Source: Macrostomum lignano
Lineage: Eukaryota
Assembly (NCBI GenBank): GCA_002269645.1
Contig: NIVC01003945.1
Location: 4,441 to 68,440, forward strand
Direction of reading: 5' to 3'
Length of the DNA: 64,000 nt
Shown here: one piece after another, positions 21,811-64,000 of the stretch
Numbering within the stretch: the first letter of the stretch is position 1
Layout of the letters: each line of letters starts with the position of its first letter
Notes under the pieces: generated by a model
What the model saw: only the letters and a program-made list of their open reading frames with translations
Database searches by the model: none
Told to the model about the DNA's origin: nothing
Made by a program: the position numbers and the translations under genes

Positions 21811-22419
21811 ATCTCCAACCGAAAAGGATGTCTGCGCATTGCTGATTTAATCAAGGATGGGGCGCGGCTGCGACTGCTTTTTTCCTTCCTGCTTTTGGAT
21901 CTTCCTAAATAAGACATTATATTGTAGAAAACACTTGTCAGAGTTTAATAATATTTTTTCAGTCATTTACTTTGGATTGATGAAAGTCTTATTAGATTAC
22001 AAGGATAGACAACAGATGAGTTCAAGCTCTTTCTTCTCCTCCCTGTTTTTAAGGTGTCATATTGCTGCGCTGTTCTGATTCCCATATCTGCTGGCGGGAC
22101 AAAATTCCCATCTCGCTGCGCTCCCAGCATTCAAAAGCATGGCGCTCGAGCTGTCTCCCAAATACCGTGTGTATTTTTTCAATCTGAGGAAATTAAATAG
22201 CTTAATCCGCTTTTCCTGTTTGAAGTGCCTGAAAGAATCCCGCTGTCCCTATAATATAGGGCACCGCACATGTATTGTAAAATACATGTATATACGGACA
22301 GAATCTTCGTACAGCGCTTCTCTGTGGTAGACTAATGTTTCTGTTCGAAAAAAAGTGTGAATTTGACAGTACATTGACAACGGATAGGACAAGAAAAGGC
22401 CAGGGGATAAGACAAGATG

Positions 22420-23272
22420 GACAGTGGACAGAAAAATGCACAGACAGTGTACAGGACAGTGGACAGGACAGGATACAGTGGACAGGACATGATACAGTGG
22501 ACAGGACAAGATACAGTGGACAGGACAAGATACAGTGGACAGGACAAGACACAGTGGACAGGACAAGACACAATGGACAGGACAAGACACAGTGGACAGG
22601 ACAAGACACAGTGGACAGGACAAGACACAGTGGACAGGACAAGACACAGTGGACAGGACAAGACACAGTGGACAGGACAAGACACAGTGGACAGGACAAG
22701 ACACAGTGGACAGGACAAGACACAGTGGACAGGACAAGACACAGTGGACAGGACAAGACACAGTGGACAGGACAAGACACAGTGGACAGGACAAGACACA
22801 GACAGGAAACAGGATAAGACACAGTGGACAGGACAAGACACAGTGGACAGGACAAGACACAGACAGGAAACAGGACAAGACACAGTGGGCAGGACAAGAC
22901 ACAGTGGACAGGACAAGACACAGTGGACAGGACAAGACACAGTGGACAGGACAAGACACAGACAGGAAACAGGAAAAGACACAGACAGGAAAAAGGACAA
23001 GACACAGTGGACAGGACAAGACACAGACAGGAAACAGGACAAGACACAGTGGACAGGACAAGACACAGTGGACAGGACAAGACACAGACAGGAAACAGGA
23101 CAAGACACAGTGGACAGGACAAGACACAGACAGGAAACGGGACAAGACACAGTGGACAGGACAAGACACAGACAGGAAACAGGACAAGACACAGACAGGA
23201 AACAGGACAAGACACAGTGGACAGGACAAGACACAGTGGACAGGACAAGACACAGACAGGAAACAGGACAAG
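22420..23272. repeat. 19-bp purine-rich minisatellite (GGACAGGACAAGACACAGT) with variants
   Basis: Direct reading. Confidence 0.95.
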
Positions 23273-25847: not shown

Positions 25848-27035
25848 TCACTGCTCCAAGACTTCAACAATTGCAGCTTTAAAATCTGACTGCAGCGAAG
25901 GGGGCAGCGGCTTCGTCTGAGCCGGCTGCAGAGGCGGCCGTTGCTGCAGCGGGGCGCTGGGCCGATGCAGTGTCCGTCCGGTGGATCGGCAGAAGGCGGC
26001 CCCGCCGCTGCCGCCCGAGTCCACGCCGCGCTGAAAGATCTGGCAGAAATTCTTGCGAAAATTCTCCGAGCTGAAAAAGTACACGAACCCGTTGATGCCG
26101 TTGTTTAGCGAGGCGAGCATTACGAACAGCAGGCCGGCTGTGTAGGCCTGTTCGCGCATGTTGGATTTCCAACTGTACGTTGCCTCAAGAATCTCAAAGA
26201 CGCACTGCGGCATGGTGAGCAGGATGTGTATGATGCACACGGGCACCAGGAGGCGATTCACGTGCGTGCCCGTGGTGGTCGCGGCTGAAGGTCGCGTTGA
26301 AGCGCTGCTGCTTTTGTGGCAGAGCGACCTGCGCTGCTGCAGGTTCTGAGCTTGATGGTGGCATCCGCTGGATATCGACATCTGCTGCCGGCGCCGGTTG
26401 GCTCTGGCGATGATGCGGATGAGTGTCACGTTGAAGACGGTCAGCAGCAGGAAGGGCAGCAGGCTGTACAAGCTCAGCGTCGTGATGAAGAACGCGAGGC
26501 GGAATTTCTTATCGTTGCTGTCGCACCTGTCCACTCTGATACCGTCGTTGTAGCGAATAACGCTCAGCTTGAATATGATGACCACGTTCTTGGCGAGCAG
26601 GATCAGCATTGAGCAGGACCACACCGCCAGCTTGAGTCTTCGGCGGTAGTACAGACTGGACTTGTGCGGCCATTTGGCGAACAAGAACCGTTCAAGAGTC
26701 ATCAGCACGAGTATCCAAGTAGCCGCCTCCTTGAGGAAGTAGGTGAGGAAGGTGTGCACAACGCAGAGAAAATCGCTCTCAAGCCTGATGTCCCGCTTCG
26801 ACTGGGTGGCCAGCATGATGAAGTAGCGGATGGGGTTCACCAGCAGCACGCAGGTGTCGGCCACCGCCAGCAGGGTGAAGACATCGCGGGACTTGGACAT
26901 GCTTCGAGTTCGCCGCATCACAACAATGACCATTATGTTGGACAGGCAGCCTATCAGCATCAGAGTGGGATAGTAGGCCATGCCGAACACTCGAATTTGC
27001 CACGGCAGGCTCCCATTCGCGCTCGAATTGCTCAT
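25848..27035 (-). CDS. Intronless class A (rhodopsin-family) GPCR, FMRFamide/peptide-receptor-like, 395 aa
   Basis: Seven hydrophobic segments. TM1 GCLSN, TM2 LAVAD, TM3 cysteine and ERF (DRY-equivalent), ECL2 cysteine, TM5 LLPF, TM6 LTMP, TM7 NNGINGFVY, helix 8 FRKNF. N-terminal NxS sequons. Confidence 0.92.
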   Translation of the reverse strand: MSNSSANGSLPWQIRVFGMAYYPTLMLIGCLSNIMVIVVMRRTRSMSKSRDVFTLLAVADTCVLLVNPIRYFIMLATQSKRDIRLESDFLCVVHTFLTYFLKEAATWILVLMTLERFLFAKWPHKSSLYYRRRLKLAVWSCSMLILLAKNVVIIFKLSVIRYNDGIRVDRCDSNDKKFRLAFFITTLSLYSLLPFLLLTVFNVTLIRIIARANRRRQQMSISSGCHHQAQNLQQRRSLCHKSSSASTRPSAATTTGTHVNRLLVPVCIIHILLTMPQCVFEILEATYSWKSNMREQAYTAGLLFVMLASLNNGINGFVYFFSSENFRKNFCQIFQRGVDSGGSGGAAFCRSTGRTLHRPSAPLQQRPPLQPAQTKPLPPSLQSDFKAAIVEVLEQ

Positions 27036-46810: not shown

Positions 46811-47133
46811 CCGAGGGTGTAGAAGTTCCACAAAGTTTCAAGGTACGATCTTATCAATTGATAGTTCATAAACTTTCGACCAGAGCCATACGCGTCAAAA
46901 CTTTCTAAATGTTGTAATTCAACTTTCGAGCCTCGAGTTGATTCAAAGCAAAACTGGAAGGCAGGCTGCAGTTGAAAAAAAGCTTTGCTTTTGTATTAAT
47001 ATACATGTTCGTTAATTAACACAGACTTGCTTTCTCGGTTATTTGTTTATTTAAAGTACTGCTTTAAAATGTGAACTGTTATAATATTCTTTATTATCCC
47101 ACAACCCACCCTTCAGGTCTGCCCTAGTCTCAA

Positions 47134-47548
47134 TACCCATCCCAATACCCATCCCAATACCCATCCCAATAACCATCCCAATACCCATCCCAATAACCAT
47201 CCCAATACCCCTCCCAATACCCATCCCAATACCCATCCCAATACCCATCTCAATACCCATCCCAATACCCATCCCAATACCCATCCGAATAACCATCCCA
47301 ATACCCATCCCAATAACCATCCCAATACCCATCCTAATACCCATCCTAATACCCATCCCAATACCCATCCCAATACCCATCCCAATACCCATCCCAATAC
47401 CCATCCCAATACCCATCCCAATACCCATCCCAATACCCATCCCAATACCCATCCCAATACCCATCCCAATACCCATCCCAATACCCATCCCAATACCCAT
47501 CCCAATACCCATCCCAATACCCATCTCAATACCTATCCCAATACCCAT
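47134..47548. repeat. 12-bp repeat (CCCATCCCAATA)
   Basis: Direct reading. Confidence 0.96.
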
Positions 47549-48474: not shown

Positions 48475-50386
48475 TCACCCCGCATTTCTATGCTTCCGAC
48501 CGTGCAGTGCCAGGTGGTCGGATCTGGAGAAGCCGCGGCCGCAGATGCCACAGCGGAACGGCCGCTCGCCAGTGTGGCGCCGCCGGTGCCTCGTCAGCTC
48601 GTCGGAGCGGGCGAAGCGCCAGCGGCAGCCGGGCCAGGCGCAGGCGTACGGCTTTTCCCCGGTGTGGGTCCTCTCGTGCGACCGCAGGTGCGACAGTTTG
48701 GCGTAGGCCCGGCCGCAGCCCGGCGCGAAGCAGACGTGCCGAGCTGTCGAACAAGTCGAAGACGCAGCGGATGCTTCGCCGCTGCTTTTCTCACTGCGCC
48801 GACGCCAGCGCTGACGCCCGGGACTGCGCAGATGCGGGGGCGAGGAGACGGGAGAAGTCGGAGTTGGTAGCAGCGAAGGTGGCGGCAGCGGTGGCGGTGG
48901 TGGAGGATGCATTCCAGAGTTGCACGCGGTCGCGGAGTGCTCCAGGATGAAGTCGAGGTCCAGCAGGGACTCCCAGACCGGCCAGCAGCAGTCGTCGAGG
49001 CTGGCGCAGGGCTGCGGCTGCAGTTCCAGCGGCGGTGGCGACGGTAGCGGCGGCAGCGACAGTGACGCCTGCGAGCTGGCTGCGACTGTCTGAAGGGCAA
49101 AGTGGCATGCAATCGGTGCAGATCCTTGGATGTTCTTACCAGACTGACTCAATGAGAGAAATAGACCCAAAGCAGAGCAAACTAGATCAGACAAGACTCA
49201 TAGTATCAAAACAAACTTGAATGATGAGACCAGACTCAAGATATCTGAAAAGACGCGAAGGATCAGACCAGACTCAAAGGATCAGACCAGATCAGACCAG
49301 ACTCAAAGGTTCAGACCAGACCCAAAGGATCAGGCCAGACTCAAAGGTTCAGACCAGACTCAAAGGATCAGGCCAGACTCAAAGGTTCAGACCAGACTCA
49401 AAGGTTCAGACCAGACTCAAAGGATCAGACCAGACTCAAAGGTTCAGACCAGACTCAAAGGTTCAGACCAGACTCAAAGGATCAGACCAGATCAGACCAG
49501 ACTCAAAGGATCAGACCAGACTCAAAGGATCAGACCAGACTCAAAGGTTCAGACCAGACTCAAAGGATCAGACCAGACTCAAAGGATCAGACCAGACTCA
49601 AAGGTTCAGACCAGACTCAAAGGATCAGACCAGACTCAAAGGATCAGACCAGACTCAAAGGTTCAGACCAGACTCAAAGGATCAGACCAGATCAGACCAG
49701 ACTCAAAGGTTCAGACCAGACTCAAAGGATCAGACCAGACTCAAAGGTTCAGACCAGACTCAAAGGTTCAGACCAGACTCAAAGGATCAGACCAGACTCA
49801 AAGGTTCAGACCAGACTCAAAGGATCAGACCAGACTCAAAGGATCAGACCAGACTCAAAGGTTCAGACCAGACTCAAAGGATCAGACCAGATCAGACCAG
49901 ACTCAAAGGTTCAGACCAGACTCAAAGGATCAGACCAGACTCAAAGGTTCAGACCAGACTCAAAGGTTCAGACCAGACTCAAAGGATCAGACCAGACTCA
50001 AAGGTTCAGACCAGACTCAAAGGATCAGACCAGACTCAAAGTATCAGACCAGATCAGACCAGACTCAAAGGATCAGACCAGACTCAAAGGATCAGACCAG
50101 ACTCAAAGGTTCAGACCAGACTCAAAGGTTCAGACCAGACTCAAAGGATCAGACCAGACTCAAAGTATCAGACCAGATCAGACCAGACTCAGGCCGAAAG
50201 ACAACGCTAATTAATGTTTAACCTCAGATCGCTGAGTTGCATTCCTTCCGGTGTCCACTTCCGGGAGCTGCAGGGGGCCGTCCGCAAACAGGCTGTCTCT
50301 GCAGTAGTCGTGGTAGATCATTGCTGAGCAGTTGAGAACCTTACTGTAAATTGACTCCGGTTGCAGTAAAGACCAACCATACGCAT
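48475..50386 (-). CDS. klf4-like: Kruppel-like factor, KLF2/4-like
   Basis: Three C2H2 fingers with KLF signatures ([29 protein letters not shown]; [29 protein letters not shown]; [21 protein letters not shown]) and an LLDLDFIL motif as in KLF2/4. Main exon 48475-49089. Upstream exon 50345-50386 ([14 protein letters not shown]) is tentative but phase-consistent. Confidence 0.88.
49230..50190. repeat. 19-bp minisatellite (AGACCAGACTCAAAGGATC/GTTC) in the KLF intron
   Basis: Direct reading. Confidence 0.96.
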
Positions 50387-52236: not shown

Positions 52237-52443
52237 TCAGGCATCCAGCAGGTTAATAAGCGGCAGCTTGTTGAAGTCGCATCCGTGATCTCGGCTGTCG
52301 TAGAATTTCACCAGCTCGGAGTCGCACTCCGGCTGGGGGTGTCCGGCGTCCAGGACGGCCAGGCACTCGTAGCTTTGCGGCGCTGCAGTTCGGGGCTGGC
52401 CGATGGCTGCGATGGTCTTTTGCACCAACTGGTGCTGGTCGAC
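52237..52443 (-). CDS. Terminal coding exon of an unidentified host gene
   Basis: Acceptor ccgccag| then VDQHQLVQKTIAAIGQPRTAAPQSYECLAVLDAGHPQPECDSELVKFYDSRDHGCDFNKLPLINLLDA*, with host-like GC3-rich codons. Confidence 0.5.
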   Translation of the reverse strand, partial: VDQHQLVQKTIAAIGQPRTAAPQSYECLAVLDAGHPQPECDSELVKFYDSRDHGCDFNKLPLINLLDA

Positions 52444-52479
52444 CTGGCGGGGCGGCGGTCGGGTTGAATATCCTTGGGG

Positions 52480-53055
52480 TTGCTTTGTTTGGGCATCTAT
52501 GACTGCTTTGATAGGGTGTCTATGGCTGCTTTGATAGGGTGTCTATGACTGCTTTGATTGGGTGTCCTTGGCTGCATTGATTGGGTGTCTATGGCTGCTT
52601 TGATTGGGTGTCCTTGGCTGCTTTGATTGGGTGTCCTTGGCTGCATTGATTGGGTGTCTATGGCTGCTTTGATTGGGTGTCCTTGGCTGCTTTGATTGGG
52701 TGTCTATGGCTGCTTTGATTGGGTGTTTTGACTGCTTTTTTTAAATGTCCCTGGCTGCTTTGATTGGGTGTCCTTAGCTGCTTTGTTTGGGTGTCTATGG
52801 CTGCTTTGATTGGGCGTCTATGGCTGCTTTGATTGGGTGTCCTTGGCTGCTTTGATTGGGTGTCCTTGGCTGCTTTGATTTGATTGGGTGTCCTTGGCTG
52901 CTTTGATTGGGTGTCCTTAGCTGCTTTGATTGGGTGTCCTTGGCTGCTTTGATAAGGTGTCCTTGGCTGCTTTGATAAGGTGTCCTTGGCTGCTTTGATT
53001 GGGTGTCTATGGCTGTTTTGTTTGGGTGTCCTTAGCTGCTTTGTTTGGGCATCTA
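52480..53055. repeat. 24-bp minisatellite (GGCTGCTTTGATTGGGTGTCCTT/CTAT)
   Basis: Direct reading; ends abruptly where the viral-like element begins. Confidence 0.94.
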
Positions 53056-53094
53056 AGTAGAAGGCATGAGGGGGCTTTTGGGACAAAATTTTTC

Positions 53095-53395
53095 ACATCC
53101 TCCATAATCCCATTAAATCCATCCATATTATCCCTGACAGAATCAGAAAAAAAGGGGGGTCGCACTCGCTCACAAAACATCCTCCATAATCCACCTAAAT
53201 CCATCCATATTATCCCTGACAGAATCAGAAAAAAGGGGGGTCGCACTCGCTCACAAAACGTCCTCCATAATCCACCTAAATCCATCCATATTATCCCTGA
53301 CAGAATCATGAAAAAGGGGAGGGGCCGCACTTGCTCCGAAAACTTCGAACATAATCCTATTAAATCCATCCATATTATCCCTGACAGAATCAGAG
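53095..53395. repeat. ~81-bp subterminal tandem repeat x ~4
   Basis: cataatccacctaaatccatccatattatccctgacagaatcagaaaaaagggggg... recurs near 53099, 53181, 53262 and 53349. Confidence 0.9.
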
Positions 53396-53599
53396 CAGGT
53401 GTCCACTGATACCCGTTATGCTCACTGACACAGACATCATCCACTGACATCCACCCATAGCATCTTCGAAACAATCAGAAAATAATCTGCATTCTTATCC
53501 CCACATTCAATTCGCAACATGAAACCAGATCCCTAAAACTTTAAATCATCAGCGCAGGGTCCTTACCCTTTGAAAAAAAGTAATAAATTCTCAATAAAA

Positions 53600-53839
53600 A
53601 TGTTTCCAGTTGTCTCTCCAGGTTCTTATTACAAAGCGCACGAGCCTAATTACAAGAGTAAGTACCGATGCAAACTTGAATGCAGCGAATACATGAGAAA
53701 ATATTGGCCCGACGTTCAAATCAATGTCCCTAATATTAATCTAGCTCTCCAAAGACATTGGTTTCATAAGTATGGAGTAACCTATGTAAAAGATTATGAC
53801 AGCTACTATAACTTTGCAGAAATCATTAGGCAATTGTGA
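53600..53839 (+). CDS. Hypothetical small Tyr-rich viral protein (79 aa from ATG), left arm
   Basis: Intact and identical in both arms; AAAAATG start context. Confidence 0.6.
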   Translation: MFPVVSPGSYYKAHEPNYKSKYRCKLECSEYMRKYWPDVQINVPNINLALQRHWFHKYGVTYVKDYDSYYNFAEIIRQL

Positions 53840-53843
53840 TTTC

Positions 53844-54707
53844 TCACATTCTCTCAATGATTAACGTCAATACAAACTCTTCCCCATTAAAATCAACGCC
53901 CATCCCATCTTCAGTCTCAAACTGTAGCACAATCTCGTGAATCTCCTTATTACTCAATACAACTCTTTTCACTGGATTTGGTTTCTCTACCACCATCTGT
54001 CCTCCAGCTACAGAGTTGGAGATGTTGTACAAAATATTCGTTCGCTTTCCCTTAAATACCCAATCAAGACTGAGATTAGTTCTGATTAGAATATTCAAAC
54101 CCTTTACAATGTCTGCTATATTGGGTGCTAAGAACAAACCGCGTACACTTTCCCGGGCCATGATAACAGCCCCCGTCGCTTGAGTGACAGTCCGCGCTGT
54201 GGATTCTGCCTTATAAACTTTCTTCACGAATCCCAATTCCCTATACCAAGTGTCATCTTTAAACTCAACCTCCGCATCTTTGTGAACTTGCATGACCACT
54301 CTCATTACAGTGAGATCATAGGTTAGTTTAACAGGGAACAGTTTCTTCTCTGGCTTACTCATATCAGGTGTCTCAAAATGGCCTCTTTTAGTAAAGACGT
54401 TTTCTAGAAAGTAATTGTAGGTATCCACACTTTGCGTGCTCACAGGGAATACCACAGGTTCTGCTGCTGCACCTTTCCATTTGTAATAAAACTTATTATT
54501 TGCTGCCGTCACATTGGGAACGTTTGACCAACCAGTGAAGTCGTTAAGATAGACATGGTAATTAGCACCTGGATCCAGGCGAATCGCCTGCTCTAATTTT
54601 TGAATAAATATCCCGTTTGAGTCATTAATTCGCCCAGTTATTGTAATAGGAATGCTCTCCTTGGAGTGCGAAATAATATTATTTAGTCTTTCAGCAATCG
54701 CTTCCAT
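53844..54707 (-). CDS. Minor capsid (penton, single jelly-roll) protein, left arm, intact
   Basis: AIRLDPGANYHVYLNDFTGWSNVPNVTAANNKFYY matches the Polinton/adintovirus penton N-terminal pattern (PIxL...YxxxL...SxPNI...NNxFxY). Typical size and position directly after the MCP. Confidence 0.75.
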   Translation of the reverse strand: MEAIAERLNNIISHSKESIPITITGRINDSNGIFIQKLEQAIRLDPGANYHVYLNDFTGWSNVPNVTAANNKFYYKWKGAAAEPVVFPVSTQSVDTYNYFLENVFTKRGHFETPDMSKPEKKLFPVKLTYDLTVMRVVMQVHKDAEVEFKDDTWYRELGFVKKVYKAESTARTVTQATGAVIMARESVRGLFLAPNIADIVKGLNILIRTNLSLDWVFKGKRTNILYNISNSVAGGQMVVEKPNPVKRVVLSNKEIHEIVLQFETEDGMGVDFNGEEFVLTLIIERM

Positions 54708-54728
54708 TTTTTTCACATAAAAAAATAT

Positions 54729-56015
54729 TTAAACTTTACTGGATGAATTGTTGATCATGTTAAGCTTCACCTTCCTCTCAAATGCATAGATAATGTACAA
54801 GTCCACAGGTGTTGCGACAGTCCTCTCAATGTTAGTCACGATATTCACAGGGCTGTTATCAGTAGGCATTTGTCTGGCAGACACATCAGCGCCAAACATT
54901 GGATATAGAGTTCCATATTGAAGAGCAGTGATAGCAATTCCATTGTTCTCTTTCACAGCCAAGTCGACCAACTCGCTATAAAATTTGCTAATCTTGTTCT
55001 GACTGAAATCTCCATTTTGTGGCAGTGCAGGGTAAAGATTATCACTGATTTCATGCTGAATGGACCGCACGTCACCATGCATGTAGCGTATAATGCTATT
55101 TGGGTTTCTCATATTAATAATGATATACCTTGGATTGCTGCATGATCCCTCTTTAATGCAGATGTTTGTTCTAGTTTCGTTTCGCTCATCTAGACACATG
55201 TAGGCTGTGTATGCAACATCAATGTCCTTCTCTATTGCCTTAAGATAGTCTGCTTTTAGTGCAGTCTTTGGCTCAATGACTTCCAAATACAGCTCGATTC
55301 CGGTTAGCTTCACCTCCATCCTTGTGTGGTCCGCCCCAGTCCACAACACTCTACTGCGATCATCTCTAGTCATCTTAAAAGTGTAGCTAAAGTTACTAGT
55401 CAGTCGATTAAATGTACTACAAAATCCACTCATGAATCTCAGTGGTACAAATACATCAACAGACCGATACAGCGGGTTTTTAGCAGCATCATCAGCACCT
55501 TGCAATGCATAGTTGTATCTCTTCTTCCTCTTTTTATAGCCACTGTCATTGGTGTCTCCTTCTTTTTCATCTGCGATAAAACCCGCACCACTTCCCAACT
55601 GAATAAAATCAGGATTCTCGATCAAACAATGAGCGTCATAGACAATTCCAAAGTTGGCGATTCGCTCCAACTCAGTGCTCCCATTCGATACACTAAACTC
55701 CTTGAACATGTACGCCCAAAAGTTACTGATCAGAGCCACATCCGCATCATGCTTGTCAACGTTAGCACGAGCCGCATCCGCACCACCCTTTGTCTTGAAT
55801 TGAAATGTCATATGGAAGCCGCTCTTAAGACTGTGCACACTAACCAAAGACGAACATCCATTGTATGTAAATGTCAGTGTTTGGCCAGGACCAAGATTAG
55901 TTTCATTCTGATTTTCCTGACTGGGAACTCTTACCTGAGTCACTTTGATTGTGCTATCATCACTCAAAATAGGCTTGTTAATTTTGTAGAAAACTGGTGT
56001 CAGTGGGTCGTTCAT
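54729..56015 (-). CDS. Major capsid protein (double jelly-roll, Polinton/adintovirus type), left arm, intact, 428 aa
   Basis: N-terminal ILSDDSTIKVTQVRVPSQ...NL...TFTY; ISNFWAYMFKEFSVSNGSTELERIANFG; VFVPLRFMSGFC; C-terminal YPMFGADVS...NI...LYIIYAFERKV. All fit Polinton-type MCP patterns. Confidence 0.8.
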   Translation of the reverse strand: MNDPLTPVFYKINKPILSDDSTIKVTQVRVPSQENQNETNLGPGQTLTFTYNGCSSLVSVHSLKSGFHMTFQFKTKGGADAARANVDKHDADVALISNFWAYMFKEFSVSNGSTELERIANFGIVYDAHCLIENPDFIQLGSGAGFIADEKEGDTNDSGYKKRKKRYNYALQGADDAAKNPLYRSVDVFVPLRFMSGFCSTFNRLTSNFSYTFKMTRDDRSRVLWTGADHTRMEVKLTGIELYLEVIEPKTALKADYLKAIEKDIDVAYTAYMCLDERNETRTNICIKEGSCSNPRYIIINMRNPNSIIRYMHGDVRSIQHEISDNLYPALPQNGDFSQNKISKFYSELVDLAVKENNGIAITALQYGTLYPMFGADVSARQMPTDNSPVNIVTNIERTVATPVDLYIIYAFERKVKLNMINNSSSKV

Positions 56016-56045
56016 TTTTTAACTAAAAATAAAATAAAATAAGAA

Positions 56046-57231
56046 ATGAAGCGAAAAAGTACACAGCAGATATCTGAATTGGAGAAGCTAGCACAAGCAG
56101 AGAAACGAGTTACCGGGCTAATAAATAAGGAGCAACAATCCTACAATGAGTTTGTCCAAGCAGCCACCGAATTTCACAAACCCGGATACACAGAAGCGAA
56201 GAAAAACCTCGACACTGTGAAGGAAGCAGTTGATGATATTCAAGAGAGCCACTTGCAAAACACATTGGGTAAAATCCCATCTTCACCAGGACAACCACAG
56301 GCTCAGGAACCAGGACAACCGGTGCAGATGAAAGTGACGGATAACTTTTTTGGCCCCGTAGTGGATGATGGAAAATATATTTTTGGAATTAGCGCCTGGC
56401 GAAAAAATATTACCGGGGAACCGGCGGATTACAACATTGAAGTGACAAAGGAAAACATTTCAATCAATAAAGGCGCAAAAACTAAAAGAATCCAGTTCAC
56501 TCAAACTTTACTTGATTACATGACTAAAAATCTAGAGAATACGTCTAAAAAGCAGCTCAAAAATTACAAAGATCTTGTTACCTTTGCTCTCGATAGGGAT
56601 ATAGATATGCTCAAGAACAACGGTGTTTTGAAAATTTTACATGAAAACGGGATTGTCTTGAACAGATTTAAAAAAATACAAATACTTTAAACAATGGTTT
56701 GGTTTGCCGGATCAGGAAGAGGTCATAAGACAACAACCACAACAACAACAGCAACAACAGCAACCGCCACAACAGCAGCAACATTTCACAGAAGAACAAG
56801 TACTCAGGCAACTGGAAAATGCAGATCCGACTCAAGTAGCTAAATATAATAATGATCACCCAACAGACTGGCAACACTTAGAACAACACTCTCCAGATCG
56901 AATGAACAGAATCAAGCAAAGAGTTTTCACACCTCAACAAAGACAGGCGCCACATGACAGTTCCATCTCTGAAAGTGAGCAGTCTTTTGGATCACCTCCC
57001 CAGCAGCCACAAGCCCAACCAACTCCACAACCCCAAGACCAACCACCCAAATCTGGAAAAGGAATAGCTGAAATCTACAAGCGAGTAGCGGTTCTTCTAG
57101 GAGCGGCAAAGACCGGAATGAAAGACGAGAATAGAAAAGAATTTGTCAACATCCTGGACAAAATGCTTGAGAGAAAATACATCGATAAGAGGGCGAGAGA
57201 GCTTCTGCTTTCGCGGTTCAACAAAAAATAA
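56046..57231 (+). CDS. Conserved Polinton-type protein, apparently one ORF split at an A-run (214 aa and 175 aa pieces), left arm
   Basis: TDNFFGPVVDDGKYIFG, and a C-terminal GKG...YKRVAVLLGAAKTG...EFVNILDKMLERKYI, resemble the two halves of a recurrent Polinton/adintovirus ORF. The second piece has no ATG (TTG start). Confidence 0.6.
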
Positions 57232-57247
57232 CTTATTTCAAGTAAAA

Positions 57248-57637
57248 ATGCCACTTATTTTCGAAAAAGACATTGACAAATACTATGACAAAGAGGAACT
57301 TAATCTTATTAAACGCGGATCTGGACTTTTCCCTGCAGGCCACTATCCAAGAAAAGAGCGCTCCGGGAATGGCCTTGCCGATTTGATCGCTCAGGGGGCT
57401 AAGATTTTTAAGGTCATTGGAGAGAACAAAGAGAACATCAAGAACGTTGCCGAAGCGGCTGGCAGTGTAGCCACAGCAGCCAAAAAGATAAAGGATACTG
57501 TAACACCTAAACAAGAGATTCAACCTCCACTGGCCCCGCTGGCTCCGCTGGCCCCAAATCCAGACATTGTGGACCCTGCAGTCTATGAGAAGATGAGAGC
57601 TAGCATTAAAAAAGGAAGTGGTTTCAAATTTGACTAA
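57248..57637 (+). CDS. Small virion core/membrane-active-like protein (129 aa), left arm
   Basis: ATG at 57248 in AAAAATG context. GSGL, GNGL and GSGF motifs; amphipathic LADLIAQGAKIFKVIG; Pro-rich segment. Confidence 0.65.
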   Translation: MPLIFEKDIDKYYDKEELNLIKRGSGLFPAGHYPRKERSGNGLADLIAQGAKIFKVIGENKENIKNVAEAAGSVATAAKKIKDTVTPKQEIQPPLAPLAPLAPNPDIVDPAVYEKMRASIKKGSGFKFD

Positions 57638-57675
57638 AGGGTACTTTCCGAGGGTACAAGAAATGTAAAGGTACA

Positions 57676-57796
57676 AGACTAGTCCCAAAATGACATACCT
57701 AAGTCCCAAAATGACACATCTAAGTCCCAAAATAACACATCTAAGTCCCAAAATGACACATCTAAGTCCCAAAATGACACATCTAAGTCCCAAAAT
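57676..57796. repeat. 21-bp repeat (CTAAGTCCCAAAATGACACAT) x 6 at the inner end of the left arm; mirrored at 59560-59687
   Basis: Direct reading in both arms. Confidence 0.95.
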
Positions 57797-57885
57797 TGAC
57801 AACTCTTTGGTGGTGGTTAGATTTGTTTTACGTTTGATTGTTTCGTCTGCAGTTGGCGCCAGCAGGTCTCTTCGAATCTACCTAT

Positions 57886-58692
57886 TTATTTGTCTATGCG
57901 CTCCATTCTACACTTGATCTCAAACAAACCGGTTGGCTCACGAAATTTTGGGTTAGTGGTCAAACTGGTTGGCTCACGAAATTCGTGGTCAGTGGTCAAG
58001 TCGGTTGGATCACTTATTTCCCTTGTGGTCTGTGGTGCCTCTTCAACAGTATCAATATCAGGAAGATTGTGTACTCCCTCAAGACGACTGATTCTTCTCA
58101 ACGATTTCTGCCATTCGGTAAAAATTAAATCTAAATAGACTTTAATTGCATCAAGTCTTTCTTTAATTCTATCATGCAACGATGTTGACTGAGTCATGAA
58201 CTCTTCTAAATTCCTCACTTTACCTGTGTTGGTTGCGACGTTTTCTTTAATTCTATCATGCAACACTGTTGACTGGTTCATGAACTCTTCTAAATTATTT
58301 ACTTTAGCTGTGTTTGTGAAAACTCCTCCTTCAAGAATACGCATCCGTCTATCAGTGGAATTTCCCAGAAGATTAACTGATGATCTCAAGCCGTTGATTA
58401 GCGAGACTATCGAAGTTATTTCTGACCTTAGTTCATTAGTTGCGTTTGACAACGGCACAAAAAGCTCATCACTTTCAAACTTCTGCCTAGCTACTTTAAG
58501 CCTGAGATCTTCCATGTTTATCTGTAGCTGGTGCATGGAGCGCTCTAGTAGGGCTTTCAGTCTGTTTTTATTCAGTTTGATCTCTGGGATCTCTTCGTCG
58601 CTGTTGATATATCGCCTGTCAAGGATGGATATTTGAGCTGATGTAAGAGCGCTGTTGCCAGAAATGGATTCACCTGCAAAATTAATAGACAT
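57886..58692 (-). CDS. Hypothetical coiled-coil viral protein, 268 aa, single copy in the unique core
   Basis: Intact ORF directly downstream of the ATPase; heptad pattern and an internal duplicated segment. Confidence 0.7.
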   Translation of the reverse strand: MSINFAGESISGNSALTSAQISILDRRYINSDEEIPEIKLNKNRLKALLERSMHQLQINMEDLRLKVARQKFESDELFVPLSNATNELRSEITSIVSLINGLRSSVNLLGNSTDRRMRILEGGVFTNTAKVNNLEEFMNQSTVLHDRIKENVATNTGKVRNLEEFMTQSTSLHDRIKERLDAIKVYLDLIFTEWQKSLRRISRLEGVHNLPDIDTVEEAPQTTREISDPTDLTTDHEFREPTSLTTNPKFREPTGLFEIKCRMERIDK

Positions 58693-58708
58693 CTTTTAAT
58701 AGCAAATT

Positions 58709-59509
58709 TTAAATTACAGTTCTTTTTTCTTTGCTGATAATCTCAAACTGGTAAGGCTGATTCCACTTGTCATAGCAAAGATTAACGAATTCCTCCTGTG
58801 AAATCTTTCTGTTTGAGTTTTTTGTTGGATTTATGAAATAGGCAGGCGCAATGAACTCATTGTAAAATCTTTTTAACCTGTCCTGTGGAATGGTTGGAAA
58901 CAGGAGAATCAGATTGCAGTTCCCGCAAATTGTTTTGTTCGGGAGCTCGAACCAGTTCTGTGCAATGTAAATTACATTACAATTGTTATGTCGCCCTCTT
59001 GTAAAATAGTTTTCTATCTGCTTCTGTGGGCCTGTCATACAATCATCAAAGACGATCAAATGCTTTCTCCCTTTTTCTAGCTCATCTGGATGGGGTAGAA
59101 GTTTGGTCTTTGGATCCACCTGCGGATCTCCATAGGAGAACACTTTAATGTTCTGCCATTTTTCATTGTCTTTGAGGTGCTTTGCATATTCGGCAGCTAC
59201 AATTTCTGGGTTACTGGGAAGGCTCATTTGGTTATTAAAACATTGAATAATGTCCTCTTTGTTCAGTTTGTTTTGCAATCCAGAAATCAGCATTCTATAC
59301 TCATCTTGATACAGTGTGGGAGAGTAGATGTGCAGAGTGTCATAGTCGATGAAGCCAGGTCTAAGAAGCATGTTAAAGACTCTGAATGTTTTACCTGAAC
59401 CTGATGAACCAACAACAATGCATCTGAAGTGACTCGGGATTGACTCATGATGAGAAAACTTAATCTGATTACGCGTCCAGTGAGGATTGAAGTCCTTTGA
59501 AAAGTCCAT
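58709..59509 (-). CDS. DNA packaging ATPase (A32-like, FtsK-HerA superfamily), 266 aa, single copy
   Basis: Walker A CIVVGSSGSGKT, Walker B LIVFDD, then FTRGRHNNCNVIYIAQ, diagnostic of Polinton/NCLDV/virophage packaging ATPases. Confidence 0.92.
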   Translation of the reverse strand: MDFSKDFNPHWTRNQIKFSHHESIPSHFRCIVVGSSGSGKTFRVFNMLLRPGFIDYDTLHIYSPTLYQDEYRMLISGLQNKLNKEDIIQCFNNQMSLPSNPEIVAAEYAKHLKDNEKWQNIKVFSYGDPQVDPKTKLLPHPDELEKGRKHLIVFDDCMTGPQKQIENYFTRGRHNNCNVIYIAQNWFELPNKTICGNCNLILLFPTIPQDRLKRFYNEFIAPAYFINPTKNSNRKISQEEFVNLCYDKWNQPYQFEIISKEKRTVI

Positions 59510-59725
59510 TTTTTCTATGATGAAAAAAAATTTTTTTTTAATAATAAAACATTTAGAAGATGTGTCATTTTGGGACTTAGATGTGTCATTTTGGGACTTA
59601 GATGTGTCATTTTGGGACTTAGATGTGTTATTTTGGGACTTAGATGTGTCATTTTGGGACTTAGGTATGTCATTTTGGGACTAGTCTTGTACCTTTACAT
59701 TTCTTGTACCCTCGGAAAGTACCCT

Positions 59726-60115
59726 TTAGTCAAATTTGAAACCACTTCCTTTTTTAATGCTAGCTCTCATCTTCTCATAGACTGCAGGGTCCACAATGTC
59801 TGGATTTGGGGCCAGCGGAGCCAGCGGGGCCAGTGGAGGTTGAATCTCTTGTTTAGGTGTTACAGTATCCTTTATCTTTTTGGCTGCTGTGGCTACACTG
59901 CCAGCCGCTTCGGCAACGTTCTTGATGTTCTCTTTGTTCTCTCCAATGACCTTAAAAATCTTAGCCCCCTGAGCGATCAAATCGGCAAGGCCATTCCCGG
60001 AGCGCTCTTTTCTTGGATAGTGGCCTGCAGGGAAAAGTCCAGATCCGCGTTTAATAAGATTAAGTTCCTCTTTGTCATAGTATTTGTCAATGTCTTTTTC
60101 GAAAATAAGTGGCAT
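59726..60115 (-). CDS. Right-arm copy of the 129-aa protein
   Basis: Translation identical to 57248-57637. Confidence 0.65.
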   Translation of the reverse strand: MPLIFEKDIDKYYDKEELNLIKRGSGLFPAGHYPRKERSGNGLADLIAQGAKIFKVIGENKENIKNVAEAAGSVATAAKKIKDTVTPKQEIQPPLAPLAPLAPNPDIVDPAVYEKMRASIKKGSGFKFD

Positions 60116-60131
60116 TTTTACTTGAAATAAG

Positions 60132-61318
60132 TTATTTTTTGTTGAACCGCGAAAGCAGAAGCTCTCTCGCCCTCTTATCGATGTATTTTCTCTCAAGCAT
60201 TTTGTCCAGGATGTTGACAAATTCTTTTCTATTCTCGTCTTTCATTCCGGTCTTTGCCGCTCCTAGAAGAACCGCTACTCGCTTGTAGATTTCAGCTATT
60301 CCTTTTCCAGATTTGGGTGGTTGGTCTTGGGGTTGTGGAGTTGGTTGGGCTTGTGGCTGCTGGGGAGGTGATCCAAAAGACTGCTCACTTTCAGAGATGG
60401 AACTGTCATGTGGCGCCTGTCTTTGTTGAGGTGTGAAAACTCTTTGCTTGATTCTGTTCATTCGATCTGGAGAGTGTTGTTCTAAGTGTTGCCAGTCTGT
60501 TGGGTGATCATTATTATATTTAGCTACTTGAGTCGGATCTGCATTTTCCAGTTGCCTGAGTACTTGTTCTTCTGTGAAATGTTGCTGCTGTTGTGGCGGT
60601 TGCTGTTGTTGCTGTTGTTGTTGTGGTTGTTGTCTTATGACCTCTTCCTGATCCGGCAAACCAAACCATTGTTTAAAGTATTTGTATTTTTTTTAAATCT
60701 GTTCAAGACAATCCCGTTTTCATGTAAAATTTTCAAAACACCGTTGTTCTTGAGCATATCTATATCCCTATCGAGAGCAAAGGTAACAAGATCTTTGTAA
60801 TTTTTGAGCTGCTTTTTAGACGTATTCTCTAGATTTTTAGTCATGTAATCAAGTAAAGTTTGAGTGAACTGGATTCTTTTAGTTTTTGCGCCTTTATTGA
60901 TTGAAATGTTTTCCTTTGTCACTTCAATGTTGTAATCCGCCGGTTCCCCGGTAATATTTTTTCGCCAGGCGCTAATTCCAAAAATATATTTTCCATCATC
61001 CACTACGGGGCCAAAAAAGTTATCCGTCACTTTCATCTGCACCGGTTGTCCTGGTTCCTGAGCCTGTGGTTGTCCTGGTGAAGATGGGATTTTACCCAAT
61101 GTGTTTTGCAAGTGGCTCTCTTGAATATCATCAACTGCTTCCTTCACAGTGTCGAGGTTTTTCTTCGCTTCTGTGTATCCGGGTTTGTGAAATTCGGTGG
61201 CTGCTTGGACAAACTCATTGTAGGATTGTTGCTCCTTATTTATTAGCCCGGTAACTCGTTTCTCTGCTTGTGCTAGCTTCTCCAATTCAGATATCTGCTG
61301 TGTACTTTTTCGCTTCAT
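60132..61318 (-). CDS. Right-arm copy of the split Polinton-type ORF (227 aa and 175 aa pieces)
   Basis: Mirror of 56046-57231; the A-run is 8 nt here versus 7 nt on the left. Confidence 0.6.
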
Positions 61319-61348
61319 TTCTTATTTTATTTTATTTTTAGTTAAAAA

Positions 61349-62634
61349 ATGAACGACCCACTGACACCAGTTTTCTACAAAATTAACAAGCCTATTTTGA
61401 GTGATGATAGCACAATCAAAGTGACTCAGGTAAGAGTTCCCAGTCAGGAAAATCAGAATGAAACTAATCTTGGTCCTGGCCAAACACTGACATTTACATA
61501 CAATGGATGTTCGTCTTTGGTTAGTGTGCACAGTCTTAAGAGCGGCTTCCATATGACATTTCAATTCAAGACAAAGGGTGGTGCGGATGCGGCTCGTGCT
61601 AACGTTGACAAGCATGATGCGGATGTGGCTCTGATCAGTAACTTTTGGGCGTACATGTTCAAGGAGTTTAGTGTATCGAATGGGAGCACTGAGTTGGAGC
61701 GAATCGCCAACTTTGGAATTGTCTATGACGCTCATTGTTTGATCGAGAATCCTGATTTTATTCAGTTGGGAAGTGGTGCGGGTTTTATCGCAGATGAAAA
61801 AGAAGGAGACACCAATGACAGTGGCTATAAAAAGAGGAAGAAGAGATACAACTATGCATTGCAAGGTGCTGATGATGCTGCTAAAAACCCGCTGTATCGG
61901 TCTGTTGATGTATTTGTACCACTGAGATTCATGAGTGGATTTGTAATACATTTAATCGACTGACTAGTAACTTTAGCTACACTTTTAAGATGACTAGAGA
62001 TGATCGCAGTAGAGTGTTGTGGACTGGGGCGGACCACACAAGGATGGAGGTGAAGCTAACCGGAATCGAGCTGTATTTGGAAGTCATTGAGCCAAAGACT
62101 GCACTAAAAGCAGACTATCTTAAGGCAATAGAGAAGGACATTGATGTTGCATACACAGCCTACATGTGTCGAGATGAGCGAAACGAAACTAGAACAAACA
62201 TCTGCATTAAAGAGGGATCATGCAGCAATCCAAGGTATATCATTATTAATATGAGAAACCCAAATAGCATTATACGCTACATGCATGGTGACGTGCGGTC
62301 CATTCAGCATGAAATCAGTGATAATCTTTACCCTGCACTGCCACAAAATGGAGATTTCAGTCAGAACAAGATTAGCAAATTTTATAGCGAGTTGGTCGAC
62401 TTGGCTGTGAAAGAGAACAATGGAATTGCTATCACTGCTCTTCAATATGGAACTCTATATCCAATGTTTGGCGCTGATGTGTCTGCCAGACAAATGCCTA
62501 CTGATAACAGCCCTGTGAATATCGTGACTAACATTGAGAGGACTGTCGCAACACCTGTGGACTTGTACATTATCTATGCATTTGAGAGGAAGGTGAAGCT
62601 TAACATGATCAACAATTCATCCAGTAAAGTTTAA
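61349..62634 (+). pseudogene. Right-arm major capsid protein copy, frameshifted near 61940
   Basis: ggatttgtaatac here versus ggattttgtagtac in the left copy; the two ORF pieces reproduce the left MCP. Confidence 0.75.
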
Positions 62635-62655
62635 ATATTTTTTTATGTGAAAAAA

Positions 62656-63516
62656 ATGGAAGCGATTGCTGAAAGACTAAATAATATTATTTCGCACTCC
62701 AAGGAGAGCATTCCTATTACAATAACTGGGCGAATTAATGACTCAAACGGGATATTTATTCAAAAATTAGAGCAGGCGATTCGCCTGGATCCAGGTGCTA
62801 ATTACCATGTCTATCTTAACGACTTCACTGGTTGGTCAAACGTTCCCAATGTGACGGCAGCAAATAATAAGTTTTATTACAAATGGAAAGGTGCAGCAGC
62901 AGAACCTGTGGTATTCCCTGTGAGCACGCAAAGTGTGGATACCTACAATTACTTTCTAGAAAACGTCTTTACTAAAAGAGGCCATTTTGAGACACCTGAT
63001 ATGAGTAAGCCAGAGAAGAAACTGTTCCCTGTTAAACTAACCTATGATCTCACTGTAATGAGAGTGGTCATGCAAGTTCACAAAGATGCGGAGGTTAGTT
63101 TAAAGATGACACTTGGTATAGGGAATTGGGATTCGTGAAGAAAGTTTATAAGGCAGAATCCACAGCGCGGACTGTCACTCAAGCGACGGGGGCTGTTATC
63201 ATGGCCCGGGAAAGTGTACGCGGTTTGTTCTTAGCACCCAATATAGCAGACATTGTAAAGGGTTTGAATATTCTAATCAGAACTAATCTCAGTCTTGATT
63301 GGGTATTTAAGGGAAAGCGAACGAATATTTTGTACAACATCTCCAACTCTGTAGCTGGAGGACAGATGGTGGTAGAGAAACCAAATCCAGTGAAAAGAGT
63401 TGTATTGAGTAATAAGGAGATTCACGAGATTGTGCTACAGTTTGAGACTGAAGATGGGATGGGCGTTGATTTTAATGGGAAGAGTTGTATTGACGTTAAT
63501 CATTGAGAGAATGTGA
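62656..63516 (+). pseudogene. Right-arm penton copy with three 1-nt deletions
   Basis: gaggttagttt versus gaggttgagttt (~63097); aatgggaagagttgta versus aatggggaagagtttgta (~63480). Confidence 0.72.
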
Positions 63517-63520
63517 GAAA

Positions 63521-63760
63521 TCACAATTGCCTAATGATTTCTGCAAAGTTATAGTAGCTGTCATAATCTTTTACATAGGTTACTCCATACTTATGAAACC
63601 AATGTCTTTGGAGAGCTAGATTAATATTAGGGACATTGATTTGAACGTCGGGCCAATATTTTCTCATGTATTCGCTGCATTCAAGTTTGCATCGGTACTT
63701 ACTCTTGTAATTAGGCTCGTGCGCTTTGTAATAAGAACCTGGAGAGACAACTGGAAACAT
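63521..63760 (-). CDS. Right-arm copy of the small Tyr-rich protein
   Basis: Translation identical to the left copy. Confidence 0.6.
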   Translation of the reverse strand: MFPVVSPGSYYKAHEPNYKSKYRCKLECSEYMRKYWPDVQINVPNINLALQRHWFHKYGVTYVKDYDSYYNFAEIIRQL

Positions 63761-64000
63761 TTTTATTGAGAATTTATTACTTTTTTTCAAAGGGTAAGGA
63801 CCCTGCGCTGATGATTTAAAGTTTTAGGGATCTGGTTTCATGTTGCGAATTGAATGTGGGGATAAGAATGCAGATTATTTTCTGATTGTTTCGAAGATGC
63901 TATGGGTGGATGTCAGTGGATGATGTCTGTGTCAGTGAGCATAACGGGTATCAGTGGACACCTGCTCTGATTCTGTCAGGGATAATATGGATGGATTTAA

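What the first reader, a model, noticed from the sequence alone, without database searches (positions are those of the whole stretch)
53056..64000. Palindromic virus-like element: capsid genes duplicated in ~4.7-kb inverted arms around a single packaging ATPase
Seen: 53056-57796 and 59567 onward are near-identical reverse complements. Each arm carries a small ORF, penton, MCP, a split ORF and a 129-aa ORF; the 1.77-kb unique core holds only the ATPase and a 268-aa ORF. Established: Polintons/Mavericks, adintoviruses and virophages have terminal inverted repeats that are usually much shorter (hundreds of bp to about 1 kb) and normally do not contain the capsid genes. Inference: an ~11.2-kb element in which most of the genome is inverted repeat, with the right end near 64,300. 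It is not a simple fold-back, because the core is unique and holds complete genes.
Basis: partly seen in the sequence, partly recalled or inferred. Interest (0 to 1): 0.92.

Follow-up and report, generated by a model that had tools for sequence, protein, structure and literature searches.

The report
Inverted-duplicated endogenous adintovirus-like capsid module
An animal genome carries a piece of a Polinton/adintovirus-like virus (capsid, vertex, fibre-like and packaging genes, but no polymerase or integrase) in which about 4.4 kb holding the capsid genes is present twice in mirror orientation; this is most likely a very recent one-off rearrangement of a viral fossil, not a new kind of virus genome.

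Summary
53360-57801 and 59563-64000 are reverse complements, 99.8% identical over 4.44 kb, around a unique 1.76-kb core. The window end cuts the right arm, so the outer 304 nt and the 11.2-kb size are extrapolations. The gene calls hold: double-jelly-roll MCP, penton (mavirus and adenovirus penton fold), A32-type ATPase, and a coiled-coil fibre-like gene. Relatives at 42-47% identity (L007) also carry protein-primed PolB, rve integrase and PLA2, so the lineage is Polinton/Alpha-adintovirus-like. The window has no trace of those genes. In the nearest relatives (70-79%) the right arm/core junction is native, including a conserved ~21-bp tandem array upstream of the ATPase. The core/left-arm junction is seen in none: three of three contigs have a membrane-protein gene after the fibre gene, which is missing here. 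No related locus has capsid genes inside inverted repeats. The arms differ mainly by single-base indels, which suggests consensus error and truly identical arms. Best reading: a truncated endogenous capsid module with a very young inverted duplication. An assembly artefact and an integrated 'snap-back' defective genome remain open. Interest is modest.

The parts
53056..53359 (.). It holds most of an 81-bp tandem array (53095-53394, 3.6 copies). Its mirror partner would lie beyond the window end.
   Evidence: It starts where a 23-bp minisatellite (52481-53049) ends. GC falls from about 0.49 to about 0.40 across 53000-53400. Membership of the repeat or of the element is unverified.
53360..57801 (.). 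Left arm of the inverted repeat (verified part).
   Evidence: reverse complement of 59563-64000, 99.82% identity.
53570..53839 (+). 89-aa ORF downstream of the penton gene; probably not a gene.
   Evidence: No Pfam or PHROG hit. No tblastn hit in any related locus.
53844..54716 (-). Penton (vertex, single jelly-roll) gene, left-arm copy, uninterrupted, 290 aa.
   Evidence: AF2 model pLDDT 72.7. Foldseek top PDB hits are the mavirus penton 6g41/6g42 (E 2e-9) and adenovirus penton bases. BFVD hits are adomavirus LO5, mavirus minor capsid and MELD-virus penton. 13 homologues found.
54729..56015 (-). Major capsid protein (double jelly roll), left-arm copy, uninterrupted, 428 aa.
   Evidence: Pfam PF21738 DJR-like_dom E 1.4e-4, below the cut-off here but on record for all 9 homologues. 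73 BFVD matches at E<=1e-3, mostly DJR capsid proteins (adintovirus, adomavirus LO7, virophage, NCLDV). 538 representative clusters at E<=1e-3.
56046..57231 (+). Left-arm copy of the gene divergent from the MCP. It is the homologue of the single 446-aa protein of L002. It is broken here (read in two frames). Function unknown; Q/P-rich.
   Evidence: tblastn of the L002, L004 and L001 products aligns in two frames. No Pfam family for the L002 protein.
57248..57637 (+). 129-aa gene (small virion/core-type protein), left-arm copy, uninterrupted.
   Evidence: Homologues lie next to the MCP in L005 and L007, and upstream of the ATPase in L012 and L014.
57681..57801 (.). 21-bp tandem array (5.7 copies) at the inner end of the left arm; the duplicated copy.
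57802..59562 (.). Unique core between the arms.
57886..58692 (-). 268-aa coiled-coil, fibre-like gene. It has a conserved N-terminal motif, internal 84-bp and 36-bp repeats, and is uninterrupted.
   Evidence: N-terminal columns are invariant with the genes that follow the ATPase in L013 and L014 and the penton in L001. Repeats. Only weak coiled-coil Pfam hits. 'Fibre' is an inference.
58709..59509 (-). Genome-packaging ATPase (FtsK/HerA, poxvirus A32 type), 266 aa, uninterrupted.
   Evidence: PF04665 at 26.7 bits, above the cut-off of 22.8. 77 homologues. Walker A and B columns are invariant in the alignment.
59558..59682 (.). 21-bp tandem array (6 copies) directly upstream of the ATPase; native position.
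   Evidence: Homologous arrays occur at the same place in L012, L013 and L014, and a 30-bp array in L007.
59563..64000 (.). Right arm of the inverted repeat, cut by the window end.
59726..60115 (-). 129-aa gene, right-arm copy, uninterrupted.
60132..61318 (-). Right-arm copy of the 446-aa-protein gene homologue; broken (read in two frames).
61349..62634 (+). MCP, right-arm copy; broken (1 frameshift).
62647..63516 (+). Penton, right-arm copy; broken (2 frameshifts).

Best explanation
The locus is an endogenous, incomplete copy of a Polinton/Maverick-type (Alpha-adintovirus-like) dsDNA virus in an animal genome. Only part of the virion and packaging module is present: penton, MCP, a divergent gene of unknown role, a small virion-type protein, the ATPase and a fibre-like protein. 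The right arm plus core (penton<, MCP<, |split gene>, 129-aa gene>, 21-bp array, ATPase>, fibre>, read on the minus strand) keeps a gene order seen in relatives. The left arm is a second, inverted copy of the block [array ... penton] joined about 84 nt after the fibre gene, where relatives have another gene. The structure is therefore an inverted duplication with a 1.76-kb spacer, combined with truncation. It was probably produced by a template switch or by recombination whose inner breakpoint lies at the edge of the 21-bp tandem array. Shown: the anatomy, the gene identities, the family, the missing hallmark genes, one native junction and one non-native junction. Inferred: that the event happened once at this locus after or during integration, that it is very young, and that the locus has no function as a unit.
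For: Family: in L007 (ATPase 47%, MCP 42%, penton 37% identical) the same module sits with PF03175 protein-primed PolB (134 bits), an rve integrase, a PLA2 domain, a collagen-like fibre and an Adeno_PX-like protein. In many JGI loci the order is integrase<, PLA2<, |ATPase>, penton>. PLA2X marks Alpha-type adintovirus virion modules (PMC8502044). Incompleteness: tblastn with all L007, L011, L013 and L014 products finds no PolB, integrase, PLA2 or 230-aa-gene remnant in the 64 kb. Native right junction: L012 and L014 have 129-aa gene > array > ATPase, and the intergenic DNA aligns. Non-native left junction: L012, L013 and L014 all continue fibre > 230-aa membrane-protein gene, and L001 does too; the window does not. 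No inverted repeat encloses capsid genes in 12 related loci. One gene is broken in both arms, so the duplicated template may already have been damaged. Youth: 8 differing bases in 4.44 kb.
Against: The right end lies outside the window, so a bounded unit with matching termini and a target-site duplication cannot be excluded. The penton, MCP, 129-aa, ATPase and fibre genes each have at least one uninterrupted copy. Their relatives evolve under constraint (MCP 77% amino-acid against 69% nucleotide identity to L003), so the source virus was recently functional. The capsid block lies in opposite orientations relative to the fibre>230-aa gene pair in L001 and L012. Inversions or inverted duplications of this block may therefore recur in the lineage and not be a one-off. 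Only short contigs (at most 4.9 kb) of close relatives were available. Differences between the arms are indel-dominated, which fits consensus error and leaves an assembly artefact possible.
Confidence: 0.55

Rival explanations
1. Assembly artefact. The genome holds one arm plus the core (and perhaps other copies elsewhere), and a chimeric long read or a wrong path through repeats produced the second, inverted arm.
For: The arms differ by 6 indel bases and only 2 substitutions, one of them next to an indel. If indels are 10-20% of natural differences (my assumption), at least 5 indel events among 7 has probability 2e-4 to 5e-3. The differences therefore look like long-read consensus errors, and the arms may be truly identical. 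The inner boundary lies in a tandem array, a place where assemblers and reads go wrong.
Against: Fold-back chimeric reads normally give spacer-less palindromes; here there is a 1.76-kb unique spacer and a specific novel junction 84 nt after the fibre gene. Only one indel lies in a long homopolymer. The left arm runs on into unique flanking sequence and host DNA.
Confidence: 0.15
2. An integrated defective 'snap-back' genome. During protein-primed strand-displacement replication of the parent virus, the polymerase switched template after the fibre gene and copied back along the capsid block. This gave a short linear molecule with two identical ends (arm-core-arm), which was then integrated as a unit with functions supplied by a complete virus.
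For: The layout terminal block, unique loop, inverted terminal block is what a copy-back event gives (general scheme for defective genomes in PMC13506859; adenovirus incomplete particles with long inverted duplications are recalled from memory, not checked here). The arms are near-identical. Capsid genes are intact in one arm and the ATPase and fibre genes in the core. GC drops at the proposed left end.
Against: It requires the outer arm end to be a genuine genome terminus. In the only relative that extends past the penton (L001) the next genes are fibre and the 230-aa gene, not a terminus. No related sequence matches 53056-53843. The right end is not visible. One gene is broken in both arms.
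Confidence: 0.12
3. One reading: a natural family of small palindromic virus-like elements whose 4.7-kb terminal inverted repeats carry the capsid genes.
For: The architecture itself. The block orientation varies among relatives (L001 against L012).
Against: No relative shows the layout or the left junction. There is no replication or integration gene. Three of three relatives have an extra gene after the fibre gene.
Confidence: 0.05
4. Two independent insertions of the same virus in opposite orientation, one of them truncated, lying next to each other.
For: Endogenous polintoviruses can be very numerous in some animal genomes (PMC11131425).
Against: Integrase-mediated insertion would join a terminus, not an internal intergenic array, to the other copy. 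The junction lies exactly at the edge of the internal 21-bp array. There is no other fragment of the element in the remaining 52 kb.
Confidence: 0.05

Closest known systems
Adintoviruses, Alpha type with the Mayetiola-class virion module (Starrett et al., PMC8502044); Polintons/Mavericks
   Same: DJR MCP, penton and A32-type ATPase. Relatives at 42-47% identity add protein-primed PolB, rve integrase, a PLA2 domain and a pX-like protein. The host is an animal and the element is integrated in the genome.
   Different: The window copy lacks PolB, integrase, PLA2 and any protease. The MCP is short (428 aa) and has only 9 close homologues among 5.8 billion proteins. The inverted repeat is at least 4.4 kb and contains the capsid genes, against 100-1500 bp non-coding TIRs (10.1101/2023.08.22.554363).
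Mavirus and virophage penton; adenovirus penton base
   Same: The fold of the 290-aa protein.
   Different: Sequence identity is only 8-16%. There is no virophage-type gene set.
Copy-back or snap-back defective viral genomes (review PMC13506859; adenovirus incomplete-particle DNA with long inverted duplications, recalled from memory)
   Same: One genome end repeated in inverted orientation around a unique segment.
   Different: Here the structure is chromosomal. Nothing shows that it arose during virus replication or that the outer ends are genome termini.
Chromosomal inverted duplications with a spacer formed by template switching (MMBIR/FoSTeS-type events; own knowledge)
   Same: Two identical inverted arms, a unique spacer of 1-2 kb, and a breakpoint at a repeat.
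   Different: No microhomology was demonstrated at the inner junction, and the outer junction was not seen.
Poxvirus, asfarvirus and chlorovirus inverted terminal repeats that contain genes (own knowledge)
   Same: Kilobase-scale inverted terminal repeats that carry genes.
   Different: Those are large genomes with hairpin ends in which the repeats are a small fraction of the genome. Here they would be about 84% of an 11-kb unit with no replication genes.

Membership tests
Polinton/Maverick/adintovirus (Polintoviricetes-type elements) | Double-jelly-roll major capsid protein | tested here: met
   PF21738 hit (E 1.4e-4; all 9 homologues carry it) and 73 Foldseek hits, mostly to DJR MCPs, although the model pLDDT is only 53.
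Polinton/Maverick/adintovirus (Polintoviricetes-type elements) | Penton (single jelly-roll minor capsid protein) | tested here: met
   Model pLDDT 72.7. Best PDB matches are the mavirus penton and adenovirus penton base.
Polinton/Maverick/adintovirus (Polintoviricetes-type elements) | FtsK/HerA (A32-like) packaging ATPase | tested here: met
   PF04665 at 26.7 bits against a cut-off of 22.8. Walker motifs are conserved.
Polinton/Maverick/adintovirus (Polintoviricetes-type elements) | [quoted passage not shown] | tested here: not met
   Present in relative L007 (PF03175, 134 bits). No tblastn match anywhere in the window. It could lie beyond 64000.
Polinton/Maverick/adintovirus (Polintoviricetes-type elements) | Retrovirus-like (rve) integrase | tested here: not met
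   Present in L007 and in many JGI loci. No match in the window.
Polinton/Maverick/adintovirus (Polintoviricetes-type elements) | Adenain-like maturation protease | tested here: inconclusive
   No Pfam protease hit in any window ORF or in the L007 products tested. It was not identified in the relatives either, so its absence here says little.
Polinton/Maverick/adintovirus (Polintoviricetes-type elements) | Terminal inverted repeats (100-1500 bp) flanked by a 5-8 bp target-site duplication | not testable with these tools
   The right end lies outside the window. Looking up the window's ATPase to get more flank found nothing.
Alpha-adintovirus virion module | PLA2X gene (parvovirus-type PLA2 domain) | tested here: not met
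   PF08398 is present in L007, L011 and many JGI loci but absent from the window.
   No inverted repeats enclose capsid genes in L001, L007, L012, L013, L016, L018, L022, L023, L025, L029, L037 or L045. Relatives continue with another gene where the left arm starts. The sample of close relatives is small and the contigs are short.

The most novel reading that the evidence does not exclude
The arm-core-arm unit is a real, bounded, non-autonomous derivative of an adintovirus-like virus. On this reading it is a copy-back (snap-back) defective genome with 4.7-kb identical ends, formed during protein-primed replication and then fixed in the germ line as a unit. The opposite orientations of the capsid block in L001 and L012 would be traces of the same recurrent process. 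It would be the first endogenised defective genome of this virus class. Its mirror-image capsid genes could also give hairpin RNA against the parent virus if transcribed.
Probability: 0.12. Interest if true: 0.7.

Novelty: new member of a known kind. Interest (0 to 1): 0.3.

Why it matters
It documents a sparsely sampled adintovirus/Polinton-like lineage with a small 428-aa MCP: 9 close homologues among 5.8 billion proteins, all on short metagenomic contigs. The source virus was recently functional, because one copy each of the MCP, penton, ATPase and fibre genes is uninterrupted. It also shows that a conserved ~21-bp tandem array upstream of the ATPase coincides with rearrangement boundaries here and in L013. 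If the unit proved to be bounded and recurrent, it would show how protein-primed viruses generate and endogenise defective genomes, and it would give a natural hairpin locus of capsid genes. As it stands it is a cautionary case: a long inverted repeat around viral genes should not be read as terminal repeats without both ends and a second copy.

Tried and rejected
- **More flank:** I looked up the window's own ATPase to obtain sequence beyond 64000; it is not on record.
- **IMG/VR scans:** scans with the MCP and with the ATPase alignment found no relatives.
- **JGI metagenome scans:** the MCP alignment found none. The ATPase alignment gave only distant relatives at 24-43% identity.
- **Solved structures by sequence:** the MCP and ATPase profiles gave nothing meaningful.
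- **Other searches:** PHROGs gave no useful capsid hit. Rfam found nothing in the window.
- **Other copies in the window:** no other fragment of the element or of its flanking minisatellites occurs in the remaining 52 kb.
- **Host identification:** an exact look-up of a GPCR ORF failed.
- **Circular genome idea:** rejected, because the penton>fibre order in L001 cannot be obtained by circular permutation of the arm+core order.
- **Flip-flop isomer idea:** considered as an explanation for L013 (MCP directly upstream of the array) and rejected, because inverting the core never places the MCP next to the ATPase.
- **Core as a degenerate palindrome:** rejected, because the ATPase and the fibre-like gene are unrelated.
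- **Paper not held:** the 1978 adenovirus defective-DNA paper is not in the library, so that parallel rests on memory.
Full report
**1. The observation**

A seed-and-extend search and BLAST of the left region against the reverse complement of the right region give one alignment. Left 53360-57801 pairs with right 64000-59563: 4443 columns, 99.82% identity, 2 substitutions and 6 indel bases. The right arm runs into the window end.

The core, 57802-59562, is unique. It holds a 266-aa and a 268-aa ORF on the minus strand. The inner 121-125 nt of each arm is a 21-bp tandem array. To the left of the verified arm lie an 81-bp array (53095-53394) and a 23-bp minisatellite (52481-53049). GC drops from about 0.49 to about 0.40 across this zone. 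Nothing in 52400-64000 resembles the other 52 kb of the window. That other sequence looks like animal DNA: a GPCR ORF, a KLF-type zinc-finger exon, a cadherin-like exon and many minisatellites.

**2. The genes**

- **ATPase.** The 266-aa protein matches Pox_A32 above Pfam's cut-off. It has 77 homologues with invariant Walker motifs.
- **MCP.** The 428-aa protein hits the DJR-like domain PF21738 weakly, but all nine of its database homologues carry that domain. Its AlphaFold model is poor (pLDDT 53, shallow alignment). Even so, it gives 73 Foldseek matches at E<=1e-3, mostly to double-jelly-roll capsid proteins of adintoviruses, adomaviruses, virophages and giant viruses. A profile search of 1.84 billion representatives finds 538 clusters, but only two are close.
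- **Penton.** The 290-aa protein models better (pLDDT 72.7). Its best matches are the mavirus penton crystal structure and adenovirus penton bases.
- **Fibre-like protein.** The 268-aa core protein is a repeat-containing coiled coil. Its N-terminal motif is invariant in the genes that follow the ATPase in L013 and L014 and the penton in L001. I read it as a vertex fibre by analogy; this is an inference.
- **Split gene.** The gene divergent from the MCP corresponds to one continuous 446-aa product in L002, and to continuous though cut products in L004 and L001. In the window it reads in two frames.
- **129-aa gene.** It has homologues next to the MCP in more distant relatives.
- **89-aa ORF.** It has no homologue anywhere that I searched.

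**3. State of the copies (counts only)**

| Gene | Left arm or core | Right arm |
|---|---|---|
| Penton | uninterrupted, full length relative to homologues | 2 frameshifts |
| MCP | uninterrupted, full length relative to homologues | 1 frameshift |
| 129-aa gene | uninterrupted | uninterrupted |
| 446-aa-protein gene homologue | 1 frameshift | 1 frameshift |
| ATPase (core) | uninterrupted | not applicable |
| Fibre-like gene (core) | uninterrupted | not applicable |

By gene, the arm differences are: penton 3 indel bases, MCP 1, split gene 1, array/spacer 1, plus the substitutions.

Indels outnumber substitutions. If indels are 10-20% of natural differences (my assumption), that excess has a probability of 2e-4 to 5e-3. 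The differences therefore look like long-read consensus errors, and the arms may in truth be identical.

**4. Family**

L007 is a 10.4-kb metagenomic contig whose ATPase, MCP and penton are 47%, 42% and 37% identical to the window's. Its gene order is ATPase, a 289-aa protein, penton, a pX-like protein, the 129-aa-gene homologue, MCP, a 130-aa protein, a collagen-like fibre, a 180-aa protein, a PLA2-domain protein, an rve integrase, and a protein-primed PolB on the other strand.

Thirty-three JGI loci with more distant ATPases often show integrase<, PLA2<, |ATPase>, penton>. PLA2X is the mark of Alpha-type adintovirus virion modules (PMC8502044). The lineage therefore belongs with Polintons/Mavericks/adintoviruses. 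L011, at the same distance, has an SF1-helicase gene and no visible PolB or integrase, so the replication module of the window's own clade is not known. The window contains no remnant of PolB, integrase, PLA2 or the other L007 and L011 genes.

**5. What the nearest relatives say about the two junctions**

Close relatives (MCP 70-79%, ATPase 69-76% identical) are known only from contigs of 4.9 kb or less. Genes are written in reading order, with > and < for direction.

- L012: MCP<, |split-gene homologue>, 129-aa gene>, array, ATPase>, fibre>, 230-aa gene>.
- L014: 129-aa gene>, array, ATPase>, fibre>, 230-aa gene>.
- L013: MCP>, array, ATPase>, fibre>, 230-aa gene>.
- L001: split-gene homologue<, |MCP>, penton>, fibre>, 230-aa gene> (its last 29 codons match the N-terminus of that gene).
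- L002: 129-aa gene<, 446-aa gene<, |MCP>, penton>.

Each of L012, L013 and L014 has a 20-21-bp tandem array directly upstream of the ATPase, and L007 has a 30-bp one. The intergenic DNA aligns with the window's, including a T-run and an A-rich stretch before the ATG. The right arm/core junction is therefore native.

The core/left-arm junction is not. In every relative that covers it, the fibre gene is followed within about 30 nt by a 230-aa membrane-protein gene. In the window there are 84 nt of unique sequence and then the inverted array. That gene has no match in the window. None of twelve related loci has an inverted repeat enclosing capsid genes.

**6. Mechanism**

The simplest reading is as follows. 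The right arm plus core is the original, already truncated, piece of provirus. The block from the array to beyond the penton was copied in inverted orientation to a point just after the fibre gene. This replaced, or followed the loss of, the downstream genes.

The inner breakpoint falls within the last unit of the tandem array. In L013 a different upstream neighbour abuts the other side of the same array. The array therefore looks like a preferred site of template switching or breakage; this is an inference. A break in one gene that is present in both arms suggests the template was already damaged, unless that break is itself a consensus error.

**7. Rivals**

- **Assembly artefact (0.15).** It is supported by the indel-type differences and the repeat at the boundary. 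It is weakened by the unique spacer and the specific novel junction.
- **Copy-back defective genome integrated as a unit (0.12).** The geometry fits. It needs the outer arm end to be a true genome terminus. The only relative that extends past the penton (L001) does not support this, and I cannot see the right end.
No relative has the layout.
- **Two adjacent insertions (0.05).** The junction lies at an internal array, not at a terminus.

One observation keeps the more interesting readings alive. The capsid block lies in opposite orientations relative to the fibre>230-aa pair in L001 and L012. Inversion or inverted duplication of this block may therefore recur in the lineage. Alternatively, the short-read contigs may come from rearranged endogenous copies or be chimeric.

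**8. Comparison and verdict**

The locus works like, and descends from, a Polinton/adintovirus-type virus. It meets the capsid, penton and ATPase criteria. It fails the polymerase and integrase criteria within the window, so it is a fragment and not a member in the full sense. Its inverted repeat is 3-40 times longer than the 100-1500 bp quoted for Polinton TIRs (10.1101/2023.08.22.554363). The comparative evidence says it is not a terminal repeat of a family-typical genome.

The lineage is a new, poorly sampled member of a known kind. The palindromic layout is most likely a very young one-off rearrangement or, less likely, an artefact. Interest 0.3.

Noticed in passing
window 59558-59682 and 57681-57801; L012 2474-2653; L014 342-475; L013 661-730; L007 303-375: A tandem array with a period of about 20-21 bp (30 bp in L007) lies directly upstream of the packaging-ATPase gene in every relative that covers that region. 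The units share a C-rich/A-run core although the sequences have diverged. Rearrangement boundaries coincide with it in the window and in L013. Its role (enhancer, protein-binding array or packaging signal) is unknown.
   Followed up: partly
L001 against L012, L013 and L014: Gene order around the fibre gene differs among close relatives. The fibre gene is preceded by the penton in L001 and by the ATPase in L012, L013 and L014. L013 has the MCP directly upstream of the array. The capsid block is in opposite orientations relative to the fibre>230-aa gene pair in L001 and L012.
   Followed up: partly
L011 4896-8085 and 9216-9632: A 16-kb contig has ATPase and MCP 43% identical to the window's. It carries an AAA_30/SF1-helicase gene and a PLA2-domain gene but no visible PolB or integrase. 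L007, equally distant, has PolB plus integrase. Replication modules seem to be exchanged within this MCP family.
   Followed up: no
L007 5466-6338 and 2946-3326: The relative encodes a collagen-repeat protein (probably a fibre) after the MCP. It also encodes a 126-aa protein that matches adenovirus protein X above Pfam's cut-off.
   Followed up: no
window 57886-58692: The fibre-like gene contains an 84-bp repeat (58158-58314, 1.9 copies) and a 36-bp repeat (57925-58013, 2.5 copies). Its C-terminal tail is much longer than in L013, L014 or L001.
   Followed up: partly
window 52481-53049 and 53095-53394: A 23-bp minisatellite (24.6 copies) and an 81-bp array (3.6 copies) lie exactly at the outer edge of the left arm. 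Neither occurs elsewhere in the window. It is unclear whether they belong to the host or to the element.
   Followed up: partly
window 10286-10983, 22202-23425, 47051-47548, 49217-50221: The host part of the window is unusually rich in long minisatellite arrays that give spurious long ORFs in several frames.
   Followed up: no
window 25848-27035 (-), 48475-49194 (-), 19230-19826 (+): Host genes: a single-exon rhodopsin-type GPCR-like ORF, a KLF-like C2H2 zinc-finger exon and a cadherin-like exon. The host is therefore an animal. The species was not identified; an exact look-up of the GPCR failed.
   Followed up: partly
L002 and L014 record names: The contigs of two close relatives come from a sample labelled BUSI22-1 ... 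METAG, and three others from one ENA assembly (ERZ27299534). All are short, which may mean they are host-genome reads in host-associated metagenomes and not free virus.
   Followed up: no
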